DNA of 64,000 bases. Origin: Basidiobolus meristosporus CBS 931.73. Taxonomy: Eukaryota > Fungi > Basidiobolomycota. Below the pieces are notes generated by a model, which did no database searches, was not told the origin of the DNA, and saw only the letters and a program-made list of their open reading frames with translations. The DNA is taken from positions 1-64,000 of the forward strand of contig MCFE01000399.1 in NCBI GenBank assembly GCA_002104905.1. The letters run 5' to 3'. This document shows, one piece after another, positions 9,197-44,353 of this stretch. Both the position numbers and the translations under genes were made by a program. The stretch's first letter is position 1, and each line of letters begins with the position of its first letter.

Positions 9197-11225
9197 ACTG
9201 GGCAAGGTAGGGTAAAGATGAGATGATTAAAAGGGATATATCAGAAACAATGAGGGTGTATAAACAATATCGCCAAATATTAATAATTTTAGTAACGTTG
9301 GAACAGAGAACAATGTGTGGCAGTTAACACGCAAGTACTAGTAGTGTTAGTAACAACCCAAATGGAAAGACTAAAGAAGTAAAACGAGTCCAGCTGAAGG
9401 TACTTATATCAAAAATGAAACATCTAAGAAATGAATGAGATGTGTATATTGGTGTGGATGACGTATAAATCAAGAATAATCGGCATTGGTATTCATTTCG
9501 TATCTTATCATAGGGCACTGATTGGACCAGAGAGGCTGATTGAAATAAATGTCACAAAGCGAAAGTTGGATCGCACGTCACATGAAATGAGTAAAAAAAT
9601 GAAGATTTTATCCTAATTATGACGTATCACTCGATTTGAAATGGAAGTATGTATCATTATTACCTGTTCTGGGACGAATACTGATCATATATCAATATCC
9701 AGAGCACGCTGATTTATCACCACACTCCTACATTAGAGGCCTCCTAATGCAAACACCCTGATCGGTAAAATTCACAACGTCCACTAAAATCGCAATCGTC
9801 GCATCTATGGAGGCCCCACGGTATGCGACCAAACTAGCCTACTCCCAGGATGAGATCCACGTTACTGTCAAGAATTGCGGCCAACCTACCAACACAATGA
9901 TCTATGAATGCAACGAGGCAATGCTTGCGTTGTGCGTTGGCGATGATTAAACTTTGTGATTTTCCTACTGTCTTGGCTCCAATTGCAGTGTTTGATCAGG
10001 CGAGATCGTCATCATCAGATTGATATGGTAATACATTATTATTCCCCCTATAAAGAATTTAAACGTAATCATTATCGTACCAAACTAAACTTGGTCAGCT
10101 TTCCAAGCGTTGACCAGTGAATACTGTTCTATCTCAAGATCGTAGCTTGGGTCAGGATACATGGGTATCGCCGACTGCTGTCGCGGCTATTCCTGCTGAA
10201 AGGCTAAAAGAGCATGCCTTGGATGGGTTGGCTTCCATTACTGACAACCGGTTTGCGCAGCCTATACTACAAAACAAAGCCGCGTGCGTCTACCTCATTA
10301 ACTTCTTTTGGTACATCCACGTTTATCACACAGCTATGTTTGTGTCACCAATCACATCACAGCTTTCGCAGATGTCATTGAGTGAAACTTGGATGCGCAC
10401 GACAACTATGTATTCAAGCGTTTTATACATACCACTAATGTTGCTCTACTAGCATCAAAGATATAGATCTTTCAAGTGATACTTAGTTGAATCTGGTTAT
10501 ACCGCCTCATCCCAAAGCTCGAGAAATACCCAACTGCTTAGCAATCACCGTTCAAATCATATTTTGCTGTTTAGATATCCCTAGGCTCGGGAAAAGTCCG
10601 ATTAGAAAACAGAATCCGAGTGGTGGAGTGGGAGATGAAATCAACAGCAGAAAGATGGCTAGAGTAAAGCATGAATATATGGTTGCTGATTAGGATTCTG
10701 CAGAATATGTAGGGGAGGAAAGATCGAATCTCGATCATTTCTTAAACCGGAATGTACCATGTGCAGCATAAATATAGGCAAAGCCCGCTTAAATTTATGC
10801 AAAACACGAAACGAACATGTCAGTGCAAAGCAAAACACACGTATCCTGGAACTGGTTGGAAAAAAAAATGGATTCCTCCTTGAACTATTTTTTTCCATCC
10901 CCTTGTTTTTTTTTCTTTTCGAATTTTTTTTTTCTCGAAATAGCGTCAGTCACTTCGGGATACTAGATATTGATTGAATTTCAGTCAACCTACTTGACTT
11001 GTTTTTGAGCGGGTGCTGTGGAGTTTTACTTTCACATCTACACTAAAGGTCTTTGTATAGACCTCCCTTCAAACACACCACTCATAGATCTCTTAAATAA
11101 GTTAATATTGTAGCGGTCCCCTTCCTATATATATCAACATCGCGCTTGTCAAGATTTCCCTAGGAAGCGCTTGTTTTCAACTAGTATAGAACTCAGAAAC
11201 CCTTTCGTATCTGAAAACATTGGAC

Positions 11226-14200
11226 ATGGCCAATCAAAAACGCCAAAGAAGCGACAGCGCGTCCGCAAGCAAGGACCACAAGAAGGATAAGAAGAAGTCC
11301 GAGAAGACCTCAAAGACCACCGCTTCCGATTCCTCAAAGCCCGCTGCAGCCACCATCGAAGACTTCCCAAGAGGAGGAAGTACCGGGCTTACTCCTTTAG
11401 AGTATAAAGATATCAGCAGACAAGTTAATCAGGATATTCTGTTCTCTGATACTACTACTGGACTCGAAGAGCCGCCCAGCAAGAAGGCCAAGGCCTCCAA
11501 AAAGGCCAAGAAGTCGAAACCCTCCAAAAATGAGGATGGAGACGACACAGAGGAGAAGCCCAAAAAGATCGAAAGCTTGAATTTCAAGCGTTTGGCTATC
11601 GGAACCCTTATGATGGGCGTTGTCACCCAGGTCAACGATCTCGATATTACTGTGTCTCTTCCCAATCACTTGATCGGTTTTGTCTCCATTACCGAGATTT
11701 CTGATGCCATCTCTGCCATGGTTGAGACAGCTGCTAAAGCCGAAGAAGATTCTGACGATGAGGAGATGGTCGATACAGCCCTCCCAAGCCTTAAGGAATT
11801 GTTCCAAATCGGACAATACGTTAATTGCTCAGTCACGAAGTTGGAGGGCGCGTCCGACAAAAGCGCCAAAGCCAAAAAGCGTATCGAGCTCAGCCTGAAC
11901 CCATCCATTGTTAATGCTGGTATTATGAAGGATGATTTGTGCGAGGGTATGATAGTTTCCGTGTCAGTTCAGAGTGTAGAGGATCATGGTTATTTGTTGT
12001 CAACGGGTGTTGACGGCGTGACCGGATTTCTTCACAAGAAAGACGCTGGAGACAAGTCCCTAGCTGTTGGCCAAGTTTTGCTTGGTGGTATCAAGAGTGT
12101 TTCTGAAAACAACAGAACCATCAACGTGACAATTGATTCGCAAGTGATGGCTAAGGCTGCACCCAGTCATACGTTGTCCAATATGTCTTCCTTGGTTCCT
12201 ACGACTCTGATTAATGGTATGGTCACTGCCATCAATCCTAACGGTCTAACTTGCAAGTTCATGGGCTTTTACGATGGTACCGTGGACCTCCACCACATCG
12301 GGCTCATCGTAGAGAATGAAGATGATATTTCAAAAGCTTTCAAGGTTGGTCAGAAGATCCGGGCTCGTATTCTTTACATGTCCCTTGGTGTCAACGAGAA
12401 AGTCATTGGGCTATCCCTATCTTCTCATGTCCTTTCTCTCTCTCAACCTGAGGTAACTGGATATGAGCTCGAGGACAACGTCAAGATGATCCCTATCGGT
12501 ACCATCTTCGAAAAAGTTACCGTCAGACGAGTTGATTCTGGACTCGGTATCTTGTGTGAGATTGATGGAGTGGAAGGTGTTGTTGGCCAGACCCACATCT
12601 CTCGTTTGTCTGACTCTCATGTCGCAAGCTTGAGTGGCCACACTGGGAAATACAAGGTGGGATCCAAGCACCCTGCCCGAGTTGTAGGCTACGATGCACT
12701 TGATGGCGTTTTGCAACTCAGTATGCAAAAGTCCGTTTTGGATGAGAAGTACCTGAATATTGACGACATCAAAGTTGGTGAAGTGATCAAGGGTAAGGTC
12801 CAAAAGCTCATCAATAATGGCATCCTAGTCGAGTTCAGCACCGCTATCAATGGATTTGTCCCAACCCTTCATATGTCCGATATCAAGCTTCTTCATCCTG
12901 AAAAGAAATTCAAATCTGGCGACAAAGTCAAGTGCAAGGTCCTGCACACTGATTCCAGCCAGAAGAAGGTGATCCTCACACTCAAGAAGTCCCTAGTGAA
13001 CTCTCAACTTCCCATCATCAAATCCTACAGCGACGCTACTCCTGGCGCTGTTACTCATGGTGTGATCACCTCCGTAAAGCCTTCTGGGTGTATTGTTACA
13101 TTCTTTAATAATGTCAAGGCTTTGGCACCACTTCCTGAGTTGAGCGACTCGTTCATCAAGGATCCCACGACTCACTTCAATGTTGGTCAGGTTGTTAAGT
13201 GTCGTGTATTGACAGTCGATCCGGAACGTGAGCAACTGCGGGTCAGTTTCAAATCTGAACCCACCAGTGTCGCCGCCAAGGAGGAGCGCAATACTGATAT
13301 GAGTGTCATTTCTCTTGGCGAAATTGTGTCCGGCAGAGTTACTTCTTTGTTGGAAGATGTAATTCATTTAGTCCTCGAACCCTCGAATATTCGCGCTACA
13401 CTTCCGGTCTCCCACCTGAGTGATCATCTTGGAGCTATCCTGAAGACTATTGTTGGCTCCATCAAGGTTGGTGACACTATCCAAGACATGGTTGTTTTCG
13501 CCAAGAATGAGCAAAAGAGTGTTGCTATGGTATCCAAGAAGCCGCTTTTGGTAAAGGCTGCCAAGGCCGGCAAGTGGCCTAAATCAGTCAGCGAGGTCTC
13601 TGTCGGGTCAATGATCCCTGGGTACGTACGCAATGTTACCGACTTTGCCGTGTTCGTTGGATTTCTTGGGGACTTCGGAGGTATTGCCTTCAAGAATAAT
13701 ATCTCCGATCAATTTGTTGCCGCTCCTGCCGATCATTTTTCACCCCAACAAACCGTTCTATGCAATGTCACTACTGTCAACGCCGAGGAAGGTCGAGTTG
13801 AACTCTCCTTGAAGCCTTCGCAAACTCCCGTCGATAAGACAACTTTCGCCAAGAATGGTGATTTCATCGAGGAGTACTTTGAGGAGCTTAATCAAGGACA
13901 TACTGAGCAATTCTCAAGCCCTGGCGAATTTGTACAAGGAAAGCTTCAACAGATGTTGCCTTACGGATGGATCATTGAGCTTGAGAATGGCATGTCAGGC
14001 TTTGTGACAAACGAGCATACCAAGGATGTCGCTGCCAAGGTTGGCGACGTCGTTGTCGGCAAAATTCTCGATGTCAATCCCGAGAAGAAGATTTACGATT
14101 TGACCCTTAGAAGTGAGCATGTCAGCGATGCTGACAAAGCCAAGCTTTCTGGTGATCTCAGCAAGAAGAAAAAGAGCGGAACCAGCAATATCATCAAGAA

Positions 14201-17120
14201 ATTGGAGACCATTAGCAAGGGAGCCAACCAGCTTGATTGCGTTGTTGAGCTCGTGAAGGAGGATTACCTTGTTCTTTCTCTTCCAAACAATAGCAATTTC
14301 ATTGCCTTCGCATCAACCAAATCTTATAACTACCGCGCGAAGCCGTTTATCCGTTATAAGCCTGGCCAATCCCTCAAGGCTGCAATTTGTAAGATCATCA
14401 AGGGTGCCAATCAACGTGTCTTGACAACAATTAGCCAAGAAGCACCCGTGAAGCCTGCTAAAGGAATCTTTGCTCGATTAGCCAAGGATCCTTTCGATAA
14501 GACTATCGAATCTTTCGATGACTATCAGCCAGGAAGAATTACTAAGGGTCAGGTGGCATCCATCAAGGAGATGCAAGTGAACATCAACTTGGCTGCTAAC
14601 ATCAAGGGAAGGGTCCATATTTCTGAGGTTTTCGACAAGTTCGCTGATATCAAGGATAAGGCTCATGTCTTCAAGAATCTTAAGCCTGGCTCTATAATCG
14701 ATGTCAAGGTCATAGGCTATCACGATGCCAAGACCCACAAGTATCTCCCCATCACTCATCGCACCTCTGCCGCTAAGACTGTTGTGGAGTTGACCATCAA
14801 GCCTAGTGAGATGAAGGTCCAAGACAAGCTAGAGGCTGACCGTCCTCAATTAGAGGAATTGAAGGTTGGTGCCAAGTTGACCGGGTTTGTTCAAAAGGCG
14901 CTTGATGATGGATTATGGATTTACGTCTCTCCTAACTTGCGTGGCCGTGTGCTCCCCATCTACACCTCCACCGATCTCGAGGTCGTACAGAATATTCCCA
15001 AGCACTTTACCACCGGAATGGCTGTGAGCTGCAACGTTCTCGGCATCAACTCGGAGAAGTATATCCTTGACCTTTCTCTCCTCGCAGAAACTAACAGTGC
15101 TGCTGACACATTTGAGGGTGTCAAACCCCAGAGCTCTCTGATTGGTCGTGTTGCCAGTGTTAAGCCTACTGGCCTTAACATCCAGCTGTCGAAGACCGTA
15201 TTTGGTCGGGTTGGTCTGACTGATATCGCTGATACTTATGTATCTGAGCCTCTGAAGGATTTCAAGAAGGACCAGTATGTTAGATGCTTTGTCCTTGCTG
15301 TGGATGCTCAGAACCACCAGATCGACCTTTCTTTAAGACCATCCTGCTTCGATCAATCCGTCAACGTCGTCGACAAGCAAATCCAAGGAGTCGAGGAAAT
15401 CGAAGTGAACAGCGTTATCCGTGGCTACATCAAGAATATCAATGACAATGGCTGTTTCGTAAGCTTGGGCCGCAACGTTGCTGGTCGTGTCAAGATTTCC
15501 GAAATCTCTGATGCATACGTCAAGGAATGGAAGACTGAAGTTAAAATTGGCCAGTTGGTCACTGCTCGCGTGCTAGCAGTTGACGCTGCCTCGAAACGTG
15601 TTGAGCTTTCGTTGAAGAAGTCACAGGTGGATCCCAACGTTGCCCCACTCCTAACCTTTGCTGATATTCAGGAAGGGGAGAAGATTAAGGGTTCCGTTAA
15701 GCGTATCGAAAGCTACGGTATCTTTATCAGAATTGAAGATAGCAACATCAGTGGCTTGTGCCACATCAGTGAAGTGTCCGACACCAAGGTCCAAGACCTT
15801 AACAAGCTTTACTCCGTTGGTGATCGTGTCAAGGCAGTCATTTTGAAGATCGACACTGAAAACAAGAAGGTATCCTTCGGACTTAAAGCCACCTATTTCA
15901 ATGACGACGACATGGAGTCTGAGAGCAGTGATGATGAAGAGTTGGAGGATTCTATGGATGTTGAGGACGAATCTGATGATGAAAATGAAGCTGGGGAAAG
16001 TCTTCTCGACCTTGAAGCTGAGGCTTCTGACGACGATGATGAGGATGAAGATGAGGACGAAGAAGAAATGGAAAGTGAGGACGATGCCAGCGAAGATGAT
16101 GACGAGGCAAGCGATGAAGAGGTGGATGCTATGGAGGTTGACTCTGTGTTGCCCGCATCTGGATTCAAATGGGACGAAGCCGAAGAAACCAAGGAGGAAA
16201 TGAACCTCAGTGACTCTGAAAACTCGGATGCCTCCGACGATGAGGCACAAAAGAAGAAGAAAAAGAAGAACCAGAAGGCGGAAACCGTTGATGTTACCGC
16301 TGAGCTTGGCCACTCTGCCCCCACTGTTGCAGCAGACTATGAACGACTTCTACTCGGCTCACCCAACTCATCCTACCTTTGGATTAACTATATGGCCTTC
16401 CAACTTCAATTGTCCGAAATCCAAAAGGCCCGTGAGATCGGAGAACGAGCCATCAAGGCAATTAACTTCCGTGAAGAACAGGAGAGAATGAACGTCTGGG
16501 TTGCCATGATGAACTTGGAAAACAAGTTTGGCACTCAGGAAACTCTTGAATCAGTGTTCCAACGCGCCGCCCAAGTATGTGAGCCCAAGAAAATTTATCT
16601 TCAACTGGTGCAAATCTATGAGCGCTCCGATAAAATGGACCTTGCCGAACAACTCTACAAGACCATTACCAAGAAGTTTAGTACCAGCTCCAAGGTTTGG
16701 ACCAACTTCGGTCTCTTCTACTTGAAGCAGGGTAAGGTAGACCTTGCTCGTGAGCTTCTTCAACGTAGTTTGAAGAGTTTGGCCAAGAGGAAGCATATCA
16801 AGACCATCACTAAATTCGCCCAACTTGAATTCAAGTATGGCGAGCCTGAGCGTGGCAGAACCATTTTCGAAGGTATCATGAGCAACTACCCCAAGCGTGT
16901 TGATCTCTGGTCCATCTATCTTGATATGGAGATTCGCGTAGGTGAACAGTCAATCATCCGTCGTCTCTTCCAGCGGGTCACTAGTCTGAAGCTTTCCTCC
17001 AAGAAGATGAAGTTCTTCTTCAAGAAGTGGCTAGCTTACGAGAAGAAATTCGGAGATGATAAGAGCGAAATGGAGGTCAAGCAGCGTGCTTTGGCTTATA
17101 TTGAATCCATCAGTTCCTAA
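11226..17120 (+). CDS. RRP5: rRNA biogenesis protein Rrp5 (tandem S1 domains, acidic tract, C-terminal HAT/TPR repeats)
   Basis: Single ORF of about 1,964 aa. DFPRGG N-terminal motif, many S1 repeats (e.g. GSVKRIESYGIFIRIEDSNISGLCHISE), D/E-rich linker, then ADYERLLLGSPNSSYLWINYMAF and KFAQLEFKYGEPERGRTIFE. Confidence 0.97.
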   Translation: MANQKRQRSDSASASKDHKKDKKKSEKTSKTTASDSSKPAAATIEDFPRGGSTGLTPLEYKDISRQVNQDILFSDTTTGLEEPPSKKAKASKKAKKSKPSKNEDGDDTEEKPKKIESLNFKRLAIGTLMMGVVTQVNDLDITVSLPNHLIGFVSITEISDAISAMVETAAKAEEDSDDEEMVDTALPSLKELFQIGQYVNCSVTKLEGASDKSAKAKKRIELSLNPSIVNAGIMKDDLCEGMIVSVSVQSVEDHGYLLSTGVDGVTGFLHKKDAGDKSLAVGQVLLGGIKSVSENNRTINVTIDSQVMAKAAPSHTLSNMSSLVPTTLINGMVTAINPNGLTCKFMGFYDGTVDLHHIGLIVENEDDISKAFKVGQKIRARILYMSLGVNEKVIGLSLSSHVLSLSQPEVTGYELEDNVKMIPIGTIFEKVTVRRVDSGLGILCEIDGVEGVVGQTHISRLSDSHVASLSGHTGKYKVGSKHPARVVGYDALDGVLQLSMQKSVLDEKYLNIDDIKVGEVIKGKVQKLINNGILVEFSTAINGFVPTLHMSDIKLLHPEKKFKSGDKVKCKVLHTDSSQKKVILTLKKSLVNSQLPIIKSYSDATPGAVTHGVITSVKPSGCIVTFFNNVKALAPLPELSDSFIKDPTTHFNVGQVVKCRVLTVDPEREQLRVSFKSEPTSVAAKEERNTDMSVISLGEIVSGRVTSLLEDVIHLVLEPSNIRATLPVSHLSDHLGAILKTIVGSIKVGDTIQDMVVFAKNEQKSVAMVSKKPLLVKAAKAGKWPKSVSEVSVGSMIPGYVRNVTDFAVFVGFLGDFGGIAFKNNISDQFVAAPADHFSPQQTVLCNVTTVNAEEGRVELSLKPSQTPVDKTTFAKNGDFIEEYFEELNQGHTEQFSSPGEFVQGKLQQMLPYGWIIELENGMSGFVTNEHTKDVAAKVGDVVVGKILDVNPEKKIYDLTLRSEHVSDADKAKLSGDLSKKKKSGTSNIIKKLETISKGANQLDCVVELVKEDYLVLSLPNNSNFIAFASTKSYNYRAKPFIRYKPGQSLKAAICKIIKGANQRVLTTISQEAPVKPAKGIFARLAKDPFDKTIESFDDYQPGRITKGQVASIKEMQVNINLAANIKGRVHISEVFDKFADIKDKAHVFKNLKPGSIIDVKVIGYHDAKTHKYLPITHRTSAAKTVVELTIKPSEMKVQDKLEADRPQLEELKVGAKLTGFVQKALDDGLWIYVSPNLRGRVLPIYTSTDLEVVQNIPKHFTTGMAVSCNVLGINSEKYILDLSLLAETNSAADTFEGVKPQSSLIGRVASVKPTGLNIQLSKTVFGRVGLTDIADTYVSEPLKDFKKDQYVRCFVLAVDAQNHQIDLSLRPSCFDQSVNVVDKQIQGVEEIEVNSVIRGYIKNINDNGCFVSLGRNVAGRVKISEISDAYVKEWKTEVKIGQLVTARVLAVDAASKRVELSLKKSQVDPNVAPLLTFADIQEGEKIKGSVKRIESYGIFIRIEDSNISGLCHISEVSDTKVQDLNKLYSVGDRVKAVILKIDTENKKVSFGLKATYFNDDDMESESSDDEELEDSMDVEDESDDENEAGESLLDLEAEASDDDDEDEDEDEEEMESEDDASEDDDEASDEEVDAMEVDSVLPASGFKWDEAEETKEEMNLSDSENSDASDDEAQKKKKKKNQKAETVDVTAELGHSAPTVAADYERLLLGSPNSSYLWINYMAFQLQLSEIQKAREIGERAIKAINFREEQERMNVWVAMMNLENKFGTQETLESVFQRAAQVCEPKKIYLQLVQIYERSDKMDLAEQLYKTITKKFSTSSKVWTNFGLFYLKQGKVDLARELLQRSLKSLAKRKHIKTITKFAQLEFKYGEPERGRTIFEGIMSNYPKRVDLWSIYLDMEIRVGEQSIIRRLFQRVTSLKLSSKKMKFFFKKWLAYEKKFGDDKSEMEVKQRALAYIESISS

Positions 17121-38016: not shown

Positions 38017-38216
38017 CCTTCATCTTCCCTTCGTTTATCTGTAACTGCATTTTTTTTTCAAGCATTATCATTATAGGAGTAAGGAGTAGACGGGGTATCG
38101 CATCGCCTGTATATATTTAAGCTACGCACCGGGTGGCATATAACTATTCTTCCCAAGTTCTCTGTCGAGTCTCAAAGAGACCTAACATATCAGTGTTGAG
38201 AAACATTTCACGTACC

Positions 38217-39368
38217 ATGGCTTTTGAACAAACCGACGATCTCCGCATCTCAGGCTACGACCCTCTCCTTCCTCCCCAAATTATTCAGGAGGAGCACGCG
38301 TTGAACGACGAAGCAAGGAACACCGTTCAACAAGGCCGAAAGAATGCAACTGCTGTATTGAAGGGCGAGGACGATAGGGTTCTGGTAATAGTCGGCCCCT
38401 GCTCTATTCACGACATAGAGGCAGCTAAAGAATACGGTTAGTATCCTAAATCTCTGCTTGAAGTCACGAGTTTCTTAATTCTGATCGTGATCCACACAAT
38501 AGCCCAGAAATTGAAGGAAGTGGCCCAGAAATATGACAACGAACTAGTCGTGATCATGCGTGCCTACTTTGAAAAGCCTCGCACCACTGTTGGCTGGAAG
38601 GGCTTGATCAACGACCCATTCCTTGACGGAAGTTTCCAAATCAATAAAGGCCTACGCATTGCTCGCCAGCTGTTGATCGATATTACCTCCATGGGCGTTC
38701 CTGTTGGGTCCGAGCTGCTGGATACAATCTCCCCTCAATTCCTGGCGGACCTTATCTCCTGGGGTGCCATTGGTGCTAGAACCACAGAATGCCAACTCCA
38801 TCGTGAGCTTGCATCAGGTGTATCCTTCCCTGTTGGATTCAAAAACGGAACCGATGGTAATGCTGGCATCGCCCTCGATGCGATTCGCGCTGCCTCTCAT
38901 CCTCATCATTTCCTTGGTGTCACAAAGCAAGGATTGGCTGCGATCACCAACACATCTGGAAACGATACCTGCCACATTATTTTGCGCGGTGGAAATCAGG
39001 GGCCCAATTACGAACAACAACACATTGCCAGTATTCGTGAAGAATTGCGTAAAACAAAGCTAAGAGAAGTGATCATGGTTGATTGTAGCCATGGAAATAG
39101 CTCTAAGCTTCACACGAATCAACCTAAAGTTTGCTCCAACCTTGCACAACAAATTGCAACCGGTGACAAATCAATTGTTGGTCTGATGATTGAAAGTAAC
39201 TTGGTCGCCGGTAGACAAGACATTCCGAAAGACGGACCTACCGCCCTTACCTACGGACAAAGTATTACCGATGCTTGTGTTGACTGGGATTGTACAGTGG
39301 AGATGTTGGATGAGTTAGCTAAAGCCGTGCAGCAGCGCAGAAGCTTGTGTACCAACGGAAACCACTGA
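38217..39368 (+). CDS. ARO4: 3-deoxy-D-arabino-heptulosonate-7-phosphate synthase, class I-alpha; one intron
   Basis: DDLRISGY, VIVGPCSIHD, MRAYFEKPRTTVGWKGLINDP, GAIGARTTECQLHRELASG, GFKNGTDG, MVDCSHGNS, ESNLVAGRQ and YGQSITDACVDW. FLGVTK (Gly) is the Tyr-sensitive Aro4-type residue. Confidence 0.93.
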
Positions 39369-40341: not shown

Positions 40342-41160
40342 ATGTGGGGAAAAAAATTCATCGCCTTGGCAATCGTTTCGCTTGCTTGTGCCGTCAATGT
40401 TGAAGGGCATTCTTATCTAACTGGGCCTGACCCACGCGTTAGACAAGGCCAATGCCGCCTTGATGGCAAAACATTCTCCGGCTCAAATCCTAAGACTTGT
40501 TATGGGCCATGCGAATCTACCGTCGTAACACCAATGAATAAGCGCGCCGTCTATCAAAGAGGCCAGCAAATCACAGTTTCTTGGGCCCGCAACAACCACC
40601 CCGGAGGCTTTGTTCGTCTTGCATTTGCGAAAACCTCCAAGTCCAAGAGTGCTAGTGAATTCGATAAGAATGTCCACAAGTACTCTTGTTATGAAGCTGG
40701 GCCTGGCTGTAAAGGCCAGAGTAACAAAAACAATAACGACAAGTTGGGAACCAGTACCAAGAACTGTAACACTATTATCAACATTCCCAAGTGGCTCGAT
40801 GACGGTGAGTGGACTCTGCAGTGGTCTTGGTATGGCTCTATGCAAGGCCATGGAGACTTCTACTCTTGCTCGGATATCATCATTAAGGGTGGCCCTAAGG
40901 GCAACAACCAAGGTGCAGCATTTGAGGGAGGTGATCCTCGTAACCCCAGTAAGCAACTCTGTGCTATTGGATGGGGTGATCGCCTGGGAGTATGCAAGTG
41001 GAACAGATGCTGGGATCCTAAGAACAAGAACTCACGCGCACCATTCGTAAAGAAAGGATGGAACACCAATGTTGTAATCAATGCTGTTCCATATTCCAAG
41101 AAACCTTTGAAGATGTTACCTGGTCGCAACCCCAACACTAACAAGTCTACACCTTGGTAA
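40342..41160 (+). CDS. Secreted His-brace protein, lytic polysaccharide monooxygenase-like (family unassigned)
   Basis: Signal peptide ending VEG followed directly by His23 (codon 40408-40410); second His in WARNNHPGGFVRLAF; WTLQWSWYG; aromatic in FYSCSDIII; 10 Cys in the mature chain; intronless, 272 aa. Confidence 0.8.
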   Translation: MWGKKFIALAIVSLACAVNVEGHSYLTGPDPRVRQGQCRLDGKTFSGSNPKTCYGPCESTVVTPMNKRAVYQRGQQITVSWARNNHPGGFVRLAFAKTSKSKSASEFDKNVHKYSCYEAGPGCKGQSNKNNNDKLGTSTKNCNTIINIPKWLDDGEWTLQWSWYGSMQGHGDFYSCSDIIIKGGPKGNNQGAAFEGGDPRNPSKQLCAIGWGDRLGVCKWNRCWDPKNKNSRAPFVKKGWNTNVVINAVPYSKKPLKMLPGRNPNTNKSTPW

Positions 41161-44100
41161 TGGTAACTAGGCTTACCCCAGCAAACATTGACTATTGAAA
41201 ATGAATGTTTTGATTTCCATCATGTCATTCGACATAATAAACAAATATTTCTGAACACGCTTGAACAGATAGTGGTATCTTCCTCTAAAGTGTAATTCAT
41301 AATGTTGGGCTGTTCCGTGATTTCAACTACCGCTACATTATGGATCGATTCGGTGGTGGTGATTGCCGCAGGGACCAGTGTGGATTCGACGAATTGAATC
41401 AAAATATTGCAAATACTACATTAATTGGTGTGGCCGTATGATGCTTTCACTGGTATCACATGCACATTCTGAACGTACTCATTGCCTTTGAGTGAATCGT
41501 TGGTGGACTACACTCTTTACATTCCCTTTTAAAGCCTATATTTAACCCACTCTAAAAGGGGTTACAGGGATGAGGTGGAACATCACCAAGCGGGCTTTAA
41601 GGGAGCGTCAGTTAAAAAGAATGTTTGAATTACCACACTTGTTTTTCACTGTTGCATTTTGGCACCCGTCATAATCAAGTCGCGAGTTTACTGAAATGCT
41701 CCCTATCGCGAAATTGTTACTGCTATGTTTAGACAGTAAGGTTTGGAGAGCGTCGTTGTGACAATATGACTGCTCCCCAAGAAGTGTTGAAAGCCATATC
41801 CTAGCTTATTTTGTATTTCGAGTGCTCTCGTTATCTGTACTTTGTCTGCTATGCAAATAAACGTACTTTAAGTAATACTAGCCAAGCACAGATCATATGA
41901 TGTGAGGTGCGTCGCTTTGCGAGAACTATAGGCTCAACCTTACGGCCAGTACCATCGTTGCATTTGATATTGCTTTGATGGATGCCATTGACTTTTCTTA
42001 CACGCAGATTGCCTCCCAAACGCCGAAACCATTATGCTTAGCACCTCATTCCAATCTTAGGCAAACTTTTGAATCCCGATAAGGACTGTTATCGGATCCA
42101 AATCTCATCGGCTCCGCCCCTCCTGTCTTTTTCGCCGAGCAAGATCTGGCTTCAACTTTTGAACTACACTACCGATGCAATAATTATATTGCTGGCTGGA
42201 GCCTGCAGCATATTTTAATTAGTATTTACTGGGGACATTGAGGCATCTTGGCTTACACCTGTGCTCTGTTGCCAAGGCCAAAGTCCAATTTTGTATATAT
42301 TACCAAACTCGACTATACTGTAATCTATTCAGCTGCAACCTTCAATCCAAACCTCAACTTTTAAGGCGTAGGTACACTAATTTGTATCCTTTGTATTCTT
42401 CACCTGATTAATGCGATATTTAAGGACTTCGATATGCTGGTCACACTCCCAAATCATGATGATCACAAAAGTAGCCTTGTGCATGAAATTCAAATATGAT
42501 GGACATTGATACTGGTGCATGTATCCATTCCAGCTTCCTACCGAATCGCGCTAATTTTCATCTGGTGTGTATGCGAATTCGCTACACAGGCGATTTGTAA
42601 CGTTGCATCGCAAACTACCTATGTACTTTTAGAGGGCCTGGCTACCACCAGTCACCAGTTTGCCGACAAAATAAAGCCAATGAGCCAACTTCGACATAGT
42701 CGGGCAGCTAGCACAGTAATCTAGATGGGTGACAGTACTTCGCTGTGCAAAGGTATTGAACATAGCCGTCGTATTCATCACAGGTTAAACTTCAACACTC
42801 ACGACAGAATCCAACAATACCCGCAAGCACCATGACGTCACTTCGCTGCTTTGTATTGTTTTACAAGGGAAGAACGATGTACCTCGTTACCGTGGGTCTT
42901 TCCGTTTGGGCTACCTGTTCCGTGGTTGATGAATACAATTTTAATTCATCAATTAGAAGCGTAAAATCGAAATTGTTTTCGTAATGTGTTACTCTTCTTT
43001 GGGTGAAGGCACTCAATAAACAAGGCCTAACGCCGAATTTTCCCCAGCAGAAGCTCCGTGGAGATTTATCTGATCATAAGGTAACTAATAGTTGATATGA
43101 TGAACAACACGCATCTCAAGAAATCAAATGTATTTGCGTCGAACTGTGGATGGCTCGTATTTAATTAAGGAGACCGGGAGGAACTCATTAGTTTCTCAAC
43201 TCAGGGATATAGCTCGAATACCTTGCAGAATCAATTTATCTATCTGTATACATGATATAAGTCATATATTCTGAAGTAAGGGTGGCTGCATTTCAATCTC
43301 GCATATCAAGGGAAATAACAAAGTAGACTGGCGCACGAGAAACCAAGTCATTGTTAACCTGGGCCTACAGCGATTTAATCGCGGCCCTTCTGAGCAAATT
43401 GCTTGCTGGGAAGCCGAATCCCTAGTGTTGAGCAGGGGTCCATATGGTAAAAAGGGTCAGTAGTAAAGCGGATGGCTATGATGGGCGGTCTCTGTATAGA
43501 ACACAACACATTGGCTTGGAACAAATGGAAATTCCGCACACTTTCGATGGCAACTGTCACGTTGATAGAAAATTACTTGGGAACTGAGGATTGTTCATAT
43601 GCTCGTACAAATTAATCAAGCAAATCACTTGTGCCCATTTGGTATGCAATTTATGGCAAGCACATTATTGTTTTCTGAGGACTGATGTCATGTTGATATC
43701 GATCATTCCATTGTAAAACATGGCGATCATACTTGTCCTTTCGTGTTGGATGCCAGGGGCTATCAACCATACAGTTTGGACCAAGGGACGGAAACAGGCA
43801 GAAATCCGCCCTTCAGCAATAGGAACCATCCAAATTATATGCGCATCGTATATGGTCGGCGTAGTGTTAACCAACTAAAGGCATTGATTGAAATCCTCGA
43901 AATCTTACTCGAGACCTAATTAAATTCACAGACCACAAATGAATACAATACCGTTAAGGAGCTCAGCAAATCGGAGAGGCTATTAATAGCTAATCATATT
44001 AAAATACGAATTGATTCATTACTGAATCAGTCATAATGGAAATATGTACCTCCTCAAGTTGCACAGCTTAAATTGAACTTGTTTGGAGACGGACGCGGGG

Positions 44101-44353
44101 GCTCAGTACTAATATTCTTTGGCCATCCTTAGGGAAAGTGAAAATTTTGGTTCCACCAAATTATAAACTTAAATATGTATGGTAGTCCCTACGTTCCTGG
44201 CTATTTATCACTTGATATTTCTATCCATATCCTTTCCACTTCACAGGCGCTTGGTCGTCCTACTCTCCTCTCTATCTCTGCTTCGTGTTGTCCTTGCATA
44301 CTCAGCCCCTTCTGCTATCCACCCTCCCGTCATTTTCCACTCGTTAGTAAACT

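What the first reader, a model, noticed from the sequence alone, without database searches (positions are those of the whole stretch)
40342..41160. Secreted His-brace (LPMO-like) copper protein that does not fit a named AA family
Seen in sequence: predicted signal cleavage (VEG|H) exposes His as residue 1; a second His lies about 63 residues later in NNHPGGFVRLAF; there is a W-x-L-Q-W-x-W strand and a FYSC-x-D-I-x-I strand; there are 10 mature cysteines and a Lys/Asn-rich C-terminal extension. Established: His1 + a second His + a late Tyr/Phe in a beta-sandwich is the LPMO copper site. Inference: the second-His context differs from the contexts I recall for AA11 (HGGGSCQ), AA15 (NHKGYF), AA17 (HPGPCE) and AA9/AA10, so this may be an uncharacterised LPMO family of early-diverging fungi. 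The lysine-rich sequence hints at an anionic or cell-wall substrate. The gene is intronless in an intron-rich neighbourhood.
Basis: partly seen in the sequence, partly recalled or inferred. Interest (0 to 1): 0.8.

Follow-up and report, generated by a model that had tools for sequence, protein, structure and literature searches.

The report
Secreted AA11-like copper LPMO, unstudied family
This Basidiobolus gene encodes an exported protein built like the copper enzymes (LPMOs) that cut chitin and cellulose oxidatively; it belongs to a large, unstudied eukaryotic family whose nearest known relatives are fungal AA11 enzymes, and whose other members are sometimes fused to chitinases and chitin-binding modules.

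Summary
Window 40342-41160(+) is an intact, intronless 272-aa gene with a signal peptide ending VEG|H. It has His23, His86 in RNNHPGGF, the WTLQWSW and FYSC strands, and 10 mature cysteines. It lies in the same gene order as its B. ranarum orthologue and is under strong purifying selection (dN/dS about 0.04).

An AlphaFold model (pLDDT 90, pTM 0.90) matches only LPMO folds. AA11 is best (Z 11.8, 15% identity), just ahead of AA9, AA10, AA13, AA15 and X325. No Pfam LPMO model hits the protein. The bacterial SCE4755 model scores far below its cut-off.

The family is large: 487 representatives at 50% identity. It is not confined to early-diverging fungi. Named members come from Basidiobolus, Smittium and several red algae; most others are unnamed environmental sequences.

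His1, His64 and the axial Tyr/Phe are conserved, but AA11's Asn-x-Glu second sphere is replaced by glycines. Two members are fused to GH18 chitinase, one of them also to a cupredoxin; others carry CBM18. This points to chitin oxidation.

My reading is a probable new LPMO family beside AA11, untested biochemically. I could not run dbCAN/CAZy. The scan had already reached the same reading for an equal-length gene on another piece of this genome (s1-236127).

The parts
40342..41160 (+). Complete intronless coding sequence (272 aa plus stop) of the secreted LPMO-like protein
   Evidence: ORF. The orthologue P0001 is 88% identical, of equal length and in the same gene order. dN/dS is 0.037.
40342..40407 (+). 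Predicted signal peptide (residues 1-22, ending V-E-G)
   Evidence: Hydropathy profile and -3/-1 rule. Homologues carry a hydrophobic N-terminus directly followed by the aligned His. SignalP was not run.
40408..40410 (+). His23, which becomes His1 of the mature protein (first histidine-brace ligand, inferred)
   Evidence: His in 93 of 97 family members. Model residue 1 aligns to residue 1 of solved LPMOs. Aligns with His1 of AoAA11.
40588..40617 (+). R-N-N-H-P-G-G-F-V-R motif containing His86 (nt 40597-40599), the second histidine-brace ligand (inferred)
   Evidence: Family counts: His 94/97, Gly89 97/97, Phe90 91/97, Arg92 89/97. Aligns with the H-G-G-G second-His motif of AA11.
40810..40830 (+). 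W-T-L-Q-W-S-W strand (residues 157-163)
   Evidence: Aligns with Y-T-L-A-W-T-W of AA11. Trp161 is conserved in 87/97 and Trp163 in 82/97.
40849..40872 (+). H-G-D-F-Y-S-C-S strand. Phe173 (nt 40858-40860) sits at the axial Tyr/Phe position. Gly171 sits where AA11 has its second-sphere Glu. Asp172 is conserved in the family.
   Evidence: Ungapped alignment to the AA11 segment N-R-E-x-Y-M-N-C. Column counts: position 173 is Y77/F14/W3, position 171 is G62, position 172 is D76.
40408..41010 (+). Family-conserved catalytic core (residues 23-223), with conserved cysteines at 38, 53, 57, 116, 123, 142, 176, 207, 218 and 223
   Evidence: Profile matches cover about residues 6-225 of the query. Conservation. 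Block-mean pLDDT is mostly 90 or more, with a dip to 64-67 around mature residues 101-120.
41011..41157 (+). Lys/Asn-rich C-terminal segment (residues 224-272), predicted to be folded: a helix and two short strands packed on the core
   Evidence: Block-mean pLDDT 79-96, helix at mature residues 204-215. Pro250 is conserved in 85/97 and Pro260 in 79/97. AA11 structures align out to model residue 244. The Lys content is specific to this lineage.

Best explanation
The gene encodes a secreted, single-domain, disulfide-rich copper protein of the LPMO superfamily. After signal-peptide cleavage, His23 becomes the N-terminal residue. Its amino group and imidazole, together with His86, would hold one copper ion (a histidine brace) above Phe173 on the flat face of a beta-sandwich. 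Reduced copper plus H2O2 or O2 would then oxidise a glycosidic carbon in a polysaccharide, most likely chitin.

The protein belongs to a large, uncharacterised eukaryotic family that is a sister of AA11 rather than a clear member of it. It shares the fold, the H-x-G-G second-His motif, three cysteines and the W-x-W...Y-x-x-C strands with AA11. It has glycines where AA11 has its Asn-x-Glu second sphere.

Shown here: the gene, its conservation, the fold assignment, the conserved residues and the fusion partners. Inferred: cleavage site, copper binding, catalysis and substrate.
For: - Gene reality: intact ORF; same gene order as the orthologue; dN/dS 0.037.
- Fold: AF2 model pLDDT 90.4, pTM 0.90. 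The Foldseek top 50 are all LPMOs or LPMO-like, with AA11 best (E 9e-6, target-normalised TM 0.53-0.56). VIA-align gives AA11 Z 11.8 (rmsd 3.5 A, 176 residues aligned, residue 1 to residue 1), AA9 10.0, AA15 9.8, AA10 9.8, AA13 9.7, X325 9.5. An exhaustive search puts 23 LPMO or LPMO-like chains first, then drops to Z 6.6 and lower for other chains.
- Sequence: the family profile hits AA11 crystal-structure sequences at E 1e-8 from His1 onwards, then AA16 at 1e-5 and AA9 at 2e-5.
- Conservation: His1 93/97, His64 94/97, axial aromatic 94/97.
- Substrate and redox hints from other family members: P0040 is LPMO-like domain + cupredoxin (PF00127, E 3e-11) + GH18 chitinase (E 5e-83). P0068 is LPMO-like domain + GH18 (E 6e-80). 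P0010 and P0006 carry CBM18, and 6 of 97 members carry Chitin_bind_1.
- Published context: Zoopagomycota genomes are reported as enriched in LPMO and chitin-degrading domains linked to animal hosts (PMC10079182).
Against: - No biochemical data exist for any member of the family.
- The canonical second-sphere Glu/Gln two residues before the axial aromatic is missing (Gly171). Such residues are considered important for LPMO catalysis (PMC12186267). LPMO-like proteins without activity exist (X325 is a close structural tie, Z 9.5).
- This protein itself has no CBM or GH18 partner. The chitin hint comes from relatives of about 30-38% identity.
- No RNA run was listed, so expression is unshown.
- SignalP and dbCAN were not run.
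Confidence: 0.6

Rival explanations
1. It is simply a divergent member of CAZy family AA11 (a lytic chitin monooxygenase) that dbCAN/CAZy would already file there, so there is no new family.
For: AA11 is the best match by sequence and by structure. The H-x-G-G motif, three cysteines and the C-terminal wrap are shared. dbCAN-based studies report AA11 expansions in Kickxellomycotina and Entomophthorales (PMC9866270; PMC11105155). Those counts could include this family.
Against: Identity to AA11 is only 15-16%. The lead over AA9, AA10, AA13 and AA15 is under 2 Z units and about 10 bits. AA11's Asn and Glu second-sphere residues, described as virtually identical in all three AA11 structures, are glycines here. 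The axial residue is Phe in this protein. With the A2 profile, family members score 90-344 bits, against 33-38 bits for AA11.
Confidence: 0.2
2. It is a non-catalytic histidine-brace copper-binding protein, used for copper acquisition or buffering or as a cell-surface protein like X325/Bim1, and not a polysaccharide-cleaving enzyme.
For: X325 scores nearly as well structurally (Z 9.4-9.5). The canonical Glu/Gln second-sphere position is glycine. About 20 of 113 family members end in a membrane helix or a GPI-like hydrophobic tail, as X325 proteins do. Two of 97 members hit the BIM1-like Pfam model weakly.
Against: This protein has no anchor. The query gives no BIM1-like Pfam hit. Family fusions to GH18, CBM18 and a cupredoxin fit an enzyme working on chitin with an electron donor. 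The full-size LPMO surface, about 200 residues aligned with AA11 and AA9, differs from the compact X325 (125-130 residues aligned).
Confidence: 0.12
3. The gene was recently acquired from bacteria (the SCE4755 'polysaccharide monooxygenase-like' family), which would explain why it has no introns.
For: The gene is intronless among intron-bearing neighbours. There is a weak hit to NCBIfam NF043005 (E 9e-5). The protein-atlas feature search lists SCE4755 clusters at 0.91.
Against: The score is 22.5 bits against a cut-off of 75, and only 9 of 97 family members hit that model at all. All close relatives with names are eukaryotic. A motif scan of 185,579 bacterial and archaeal species genomes found no relative. 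ORF GC (47.7%) is close to window GC (44.2%). Gene order is shared between two Basidiobolus species.
Confidence: 0.03

Closest known systems
CAZy AA11 lytic chitin monooxygenases (AoAA11 4MAH/4MAI, AfAA11B 9EXJ/9HDG, AfAA11A 7P3U)
   Same: Best match by sequence and structure. Shared features: N-terminal His, second His in an H-x-G-G motif, the G-x-[YW]-T-L-x-W-x-W strand, the axial aromatic three residues before a conserved Cys, three aligned cysteines, and a C-terminal segment that wraps the core. The chitin link comes through family fusions.
   Different: Identity is only 15-16%. AA11's second-sphere Asn-x-Glu before the Tyr is Gly-x-Gly here. An Asp (76/97) precedes the axial residue. The axial residue is Phe in the Basidiobolus proteins. 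The N-terminus (H-S-Y-L-x-x-P-x-x-R) resembles AA10, AA13 and AA15 (my recollection) rather than the H-M-M-M-A-Q-P of AoAA11. There are two extra conserved disulfide-forming cysteine pairs. The taxonomic range includes red algae.
AA9, AA10, AA13 and AA15 LPMOs
   Same: Same beta-sandwich fold, with residue 1 aligned to the catalytic His1 (Z 9.7-10.0). Ten of 97 family members hit Pfam AA9 weakly.
   Different: The query hits neither PF03443 nor PF03067. Identity is 11-18%. Only the core (model residues 1-160) aligns with AA10, AA13 and AA15.
X325 / Bim1-like copper-binding LPMO-like proteins (LaX325 6IBH/6IBI)
   Same: Histidine-brace fold (Z 9.4-9.5). Some family members are membrane- or GPI-tethered.
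   Different: X325 is much smaller (125-130 residues aligned). The query gives no PF20238 hit and has no anchor. Family fusions point to an enzymatic role.
NCBIfam NF043005, SCE4755 family polysaccharide monooxygenase-like protein (bacterial, uncharacterised)
   Same: Weak similarity across residues 54-179 (E 9e-5). The atlas feature score is 0.91.
   Different: The score is 22.5 bits against a cut-off of 75. Only 9 of 97 family members hit the model. No paper mentions the name.

Membership tests
LPMO superfamily (histidine-brace copper proteins) | Secretion signal cleaved so that a histidine becomes residue 1 | tested here: inconclusive
   The hydrophobic N-terminus and the V-E-G|H site obey the -3/-1 rule. 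93 of 97 homologues align a His at this column after their own signal-like N-terminus. SignalP was not available and there are no protein data.
LPMO superfamily (histidine-brace copper proteins) | Immunoglobulin-like beta-sandwich fold matching solved LPMOs | tested here: met
   Model pLDDT 90.4. All top Foldseek and VIA-align hits are LPMOs, Z up to 11.8. The next chains outside the LPMO and LPMO-like group score Z 6.6 and lower.
LPMO superfamily (histidine-brace copper proteins) | Conserved second histidine and an axial Tyr/Phe | tested here: met
   His86 is conserved in 94/97. Position 173 is Y77/F14/W3. Both align to the AA11 ligand His and axial Tyr. The spatial adjacency of the two histidines was not measured because no coordinates were available.
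LPMO superfamily (histidine-brace copper proteins) | Copper binding and oxidative cleavage of a polysaccharide | not testable with these tools
   This needs expression, EPR and product analysis.
CAZy AA11 | Significant sequence similarity to characterised AA11 catalytic domains (CAZy/dbCAN assignment) | tested here: inconclusive
   The single sequence gives E 0.007-0.035. The family profile gives E 1e-8 (33-38 bits), about 10 bits above AA16 and AA9. The dbCAN AA11 HMM was not available.
CAZy AA11 | Second-sphere Asn and Glu with an axial Tyr (N-x-E-x-Y), virtually identical in all three AA11 structures (PMC12186267) | tested here: not met
   The ungapped alignment puts Gly169, Gly171 and Phe173 at these positions. 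In the family, the Glu position is G62/A7/S7 of 97.
AA10 / AA15 / AA16 (Pfam PF03067 LPMO_10) | Match to PF03067 above the gathering score | tested here: not met
   No hit even at E up to 10.
AA9 (Pfam PF03443) | Match to PF03443 above the gathering score | tested here: not met
   The query gives no hit. Ten of 97 relatives hit weakly, best E 1.4e-7.
X325 / BIM1-like (Pfam PF20238) | Match to PF20238; compact domain of about 150 aa; GPI anchor | tested here: not met
   The query gives no hit. The domain is about 250 aa. There is no C-terminal hydrophobic tail.
NCBIfam NF043005 SCE4755 family | Score of at least 75 bits | tested here: not met
   22.5-22.8 bits.

The most novel reading that the evidence does not exclude
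This protein represents a bona fide new LPMO family that would deserve its own AA number. The family is spread across fungi (Zoopagomycota), red algae and many uncultured eukaryotes. Its copper-site surroundings are unusual: glycines replace the canonical Glu/Gln and Asn/His second-sphere residues, and there is a conserved R-N-N-H motif and an Asp next to the axial Tyr/Phe. It would act on chitin. Natural fusions to GH18 chitinase and to a cupredoxin suggest a built-in electron donor.
Probability: 0.45. Interest if true: 0.75.

Novelty: new variant of a known kind. Interest (0 to 1): 0.58.

Why it matters
Each new LPMO family so far (AA11, AA13-AA17) has brought new substrates or new copper-site chemistry. 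This family is large: 487 clusters at 50% identity.

It occurs in organisms where no LPMO of this kind has been described in the papers I could search. These include red seaweeds and animal-associated Zoopagomycota.

It also lacks the second-sphere Glu/Gln thought to position H2O2. If it is active, it would test how essential that residue is.

The GH18 and cupredoxin fusions offer a ready hypothesis for the substrate and the electron donor. For Basidiobolus, a gut-associated saprobe and occasional pathogen, the protein may contribute to insect-chitin use or to cell-wall remodelling.

Tried and rejected
- The RNA evidence search listed no run, so expression is untested.
- The bacterial and archaeal genome scan failed with the 97-sequence alignment because it has no conserved stretch to search with. 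With the 4-sequence alignment, 57 stretches matched a pattern but none was a relative. This weakens recent bacterial transfer but is not exhaustive.
- Paper searches found no description of this family. I searched for SCE4755, DUF7492 and AA11-like, red-algal LPMOs, and new LPMO families.
- The 'LPMO14' and Drosophila families of PMC5320794 are, from my own knowledge, the later AA16 and AA15, not this family.
- AA18 is cited to Santos et al. 2025. I recall that as a different fold, but I did not check it.
- A weak tblastn hit at 14232-14552 (E 0.095) lies inside a 1966-aa ORF, which from its sequence I take to be an Rrp5-like protein. It is noise.
- The listing of cluster members gave no organism names for the ten closest environmental relatives.
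- Model coordinates are not exposed, so I could not measure His-His geometry or identify replacement second-sphere residues.
- SignalP and dbCAN are not among the tools.
- I did not build an AA11 profile, because no AA11 sequence was available by reference.

Full report
**The object.** Window 40342-41160(+) is a single 272-aa ORF starting at ATG (sequence).
- a signal-like N-terminus ending V-E-G, directly followed by His23;
- His86 in R-N-N-H-P-G-G-F-V-R;
- W-T-L-Q-W-S-W at residues 157-163;
- F-Y-S-C-S-D-I-I-I at residues 173-181;
- ten cysteines in the mature chain;
- a basic, Asn-rich C-terminal third.

The mature protein has a net charge of +21 and 10% lysine, three times the family median.

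**A real, conserved gene.** The closest proteins are two Basidiobolus ranarum hypothetical proteins, at 88% and 76% identity, so the window is from a Basidiobolus species. The 88% copy lies in the same gene order as here: DAHP synthase, then this gene, then a CBM9-like gene. It is also intronless and 272 aa long (window neighbours). Between the two species, synonymous sites are saturated (pS 0.70) while pN is 0.07, giving dN/dS 0.037.

**Database families.** Pfam gives nothing for the query, even at E up to 10. NCBIfam gives only a sub-threshold match to the bacterial 'SCE4755 family polysaccharide monooxygenase-like protein' (22.5 bits, cut-off 75). Against PDB sequences, the three best hits are the three AA11 LPMOs (E 0.007-0.035). 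Their alignments pair N-H-P-G-G-F with T-H-G-G-G-S, and W-T-L-Q-W-S-W...F-Y-S-C with Y-T-L-A-W-T-W...M-Y-M-N-C.

**The family.**
- A profile search of 1.84 billion representatives found 487 clusters at E up to 1e-3 and 324 at E up to 1e-10. Matches usually cover about query residues 6-225.
- Almost all full-length members have a hydrophobic N-terminus followed by H-[ST]-[YFW]-[LMI]-x-x-P, and later an N-N-H-x-G-G motif.
- Named members are from Basidiobolus, Smittium mucronatum and the red algae Pyropia, Porphyra, Neoporphyra, Gracilaria and Agarophyton. All are annotated as hypothetical proteins, except the Smittium protein, whose UniRef name is 'Chitin-binding type-4 domain-containing protein'. 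The rest are unnamed metagenome or transcriptome sequences.
- In a quick ML tree, the three Basidiobolus sequences form a long-branched clade in one of two main groups. The red algae sit in the other group.
- The family is therefore widespread in eukaryotes, not a speciality of early-diverging fungi.
- A motif scan of bacterial and archaeal species genomes found no relative. Only 9 of 97 members touch the SCE4755 model. I see no sign of recent bacterial transfer.

**Fold.**
- With a 97-sequence alignment (A2), AlphaFold gives pLDDT 90.4 and pTM 0.90. Block-mean pLDDT is 79 or more in every 10-residue block except mature residues 101-120 (64-67), and no residue falls below 50.
- The first 50 Foldseek matches are all LPMOs or LPMO-like proteins. 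AfAA11B and AoAA11 come first, with E 9e-6 to 5e-5, target-normalised TM 0.52-0.56 and 16-17% identity.
- VIA-align gives Z 11.8, 11.5, 10.7 and 10.6 for the AA11 structures (rmsd 3.5-3.6 A, 165-177 residues aligned, model residue 1 on chain residue 1, reaching model residue 244).
- Other families follow closely: AA9 10.0, AA15 9.8, AA10 9.8, AA13 9.7, X325 9.5.
- The exhaustive search of 48,161 chains puts 23 LPMO or LPMO-like chains first, including AA16, fusolin and AA14. Scores then fall to Z 6.6 and lower for chains outside that group.
- The ESM-Atlas shape search agrees. The best cluster is a Zoopagomycota one without Pfam. Next comes an Ascomycota 'endoglucanase' cluster without Pfam, which I take to be AA11, and then AA9.

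**Relationship to AA11.** The family profile matches AA11 sequences at E 1e-8 (33-38 bits), from His1 through the axial Tyr. AA16 scores 28 bits and AA9 27 bits. True family members score 90-344 bits with the same profile. AA11 is therefore the nearest known family, but only by a modest margin.

Shared with AA11: His1; the H-x-G-G second-His motif; cysteines aligned with Cys57, Cys123 and Cys176; the W-x-W strand; the aromatic three residues before Cys176; and a C-terminal wrap.

Different from AA11:
- Identity is about 15%.
- The three AA11 structures share an axial Tyr plus an Asn and a Glu in the second sphere (PMC12186267). The ungapped alignment places Gly169, Gly171 and Phe173 at those positions.
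- Across the family, the Glu position is Gly in 62 of 97 members. The axial position is Y77/F14/W3. The residue between them is Asp in 76 of 97.
- The Basidiobolus proteins are among the minority with Phe at the axial position.

**The C-terminal 'extension'.** Residues 186-223 are conserved in the family: F194, G197, C207, C218 and C223, and further on P250 and P260. The region is predicted with a helix and short strands at block-mean pLDDT 79-96. It is mostly part of the domain. Only the lysine richness is lineage-specific.

**Function.** This protein is a stand-alone catalytic domain, but relatives supply context.
- P0040 (1515 aa) is LPMO-like domain + plastocyanin/azurin-type cupredoxin (E 3e-11) + GH18 chitinase (E 5e-83).
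- P0068 (985 aa) is LPMO-like domain + GH18 (E 6e-80).
- P0010 and P0006 carry CBM18 hevein-type chitin-binding modules. Six of 97 members carry Chitin_bind_1. One has a weak CBM2 hit. These members keep His1 and the N-N-H motif.
- About 20 of 113 members end in a membrane helix or a GPI-like tail.

The most economical reading is a copper-dependent oxidative enzyme working on chitin. A cupredoxin may serve as reductant in some lineages. The missing canonical second-sphere Glu/Gln keeps open a non-catalytic, X325-like copper-binding role.

**Literature.** I found no paper on this family. dbCAN-based genome papers report AA11 expansions in Kickxellomycotina and Entomophthorales. Those counts may or may not include this family, and I could not run dbCAN.

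**Earlier scan notes.** The scan's own earlier notes list several unclassified histidine-brace candidates in this genome. One is an 819-letter intronless gene on another piece, whose follow-up reached the same 'AA11-like, uncharacterised family' reading. It is probably a paralogue or an allelic copy. I reached my reading independently.

**Limits.** There is no SignalP result, no dbCAN result, no model coordinates (so the His-His distance was not measured), no RNA evidence and no biochemistry.

Noticed in passing
P0040 (1515 aa) and P0068 (985 aa), environmental relatives: These are natural fusions of this LPMO-like domain with a GH18 chitinase. In P0040 there is also a plastocyanin/azurin-type cupredoxin domain between the two, a possible built-in electron donor for the copper site.
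   Followed up: partly
window 38133-39368 (+): A DAHP synthase (PF00793) gene split into two ORF pieces by a short intron. It is the upstream neighbour in both Basidiobolus species.
   Followed up: partly
The gene at the matching position in B. ranarum has a weak PF06452 CBM9_1 hit. The order DAHP synthase, LPMO-like gene, CBM9-like gene is conserved.
   Followed up: partly
window 41161-44353: A gene-free gap of about 3.2 kb downstream of the gene, about 1.6 kb longer than the corresponding gap in B. ranarum. Only window 43906-44260 still aligns (74%) to the B. ranarum region upstream of the CBM9-like gene. The extra DNA was not examined.
   Followed up: no
window 11220-17120 (+): A 1966-aa uninterrupted ORF with a long acidic stretch. 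From its sequence I take it to be an Rrp5-like rRNA-processing protein, but I ran no family search on it. It is the source of a spurious weak tblastn hit to the query.
   Followed up: no
Family-wide (alignment A2): The Basidiobolus copies (Lys-rich) and the red-algal clade (mostly Arg-rich) are both strongly basic, with net charge from +17 to above +30. The family median is +2 and some clades are acidic. The reason is unexplained.
   Followed up: partly
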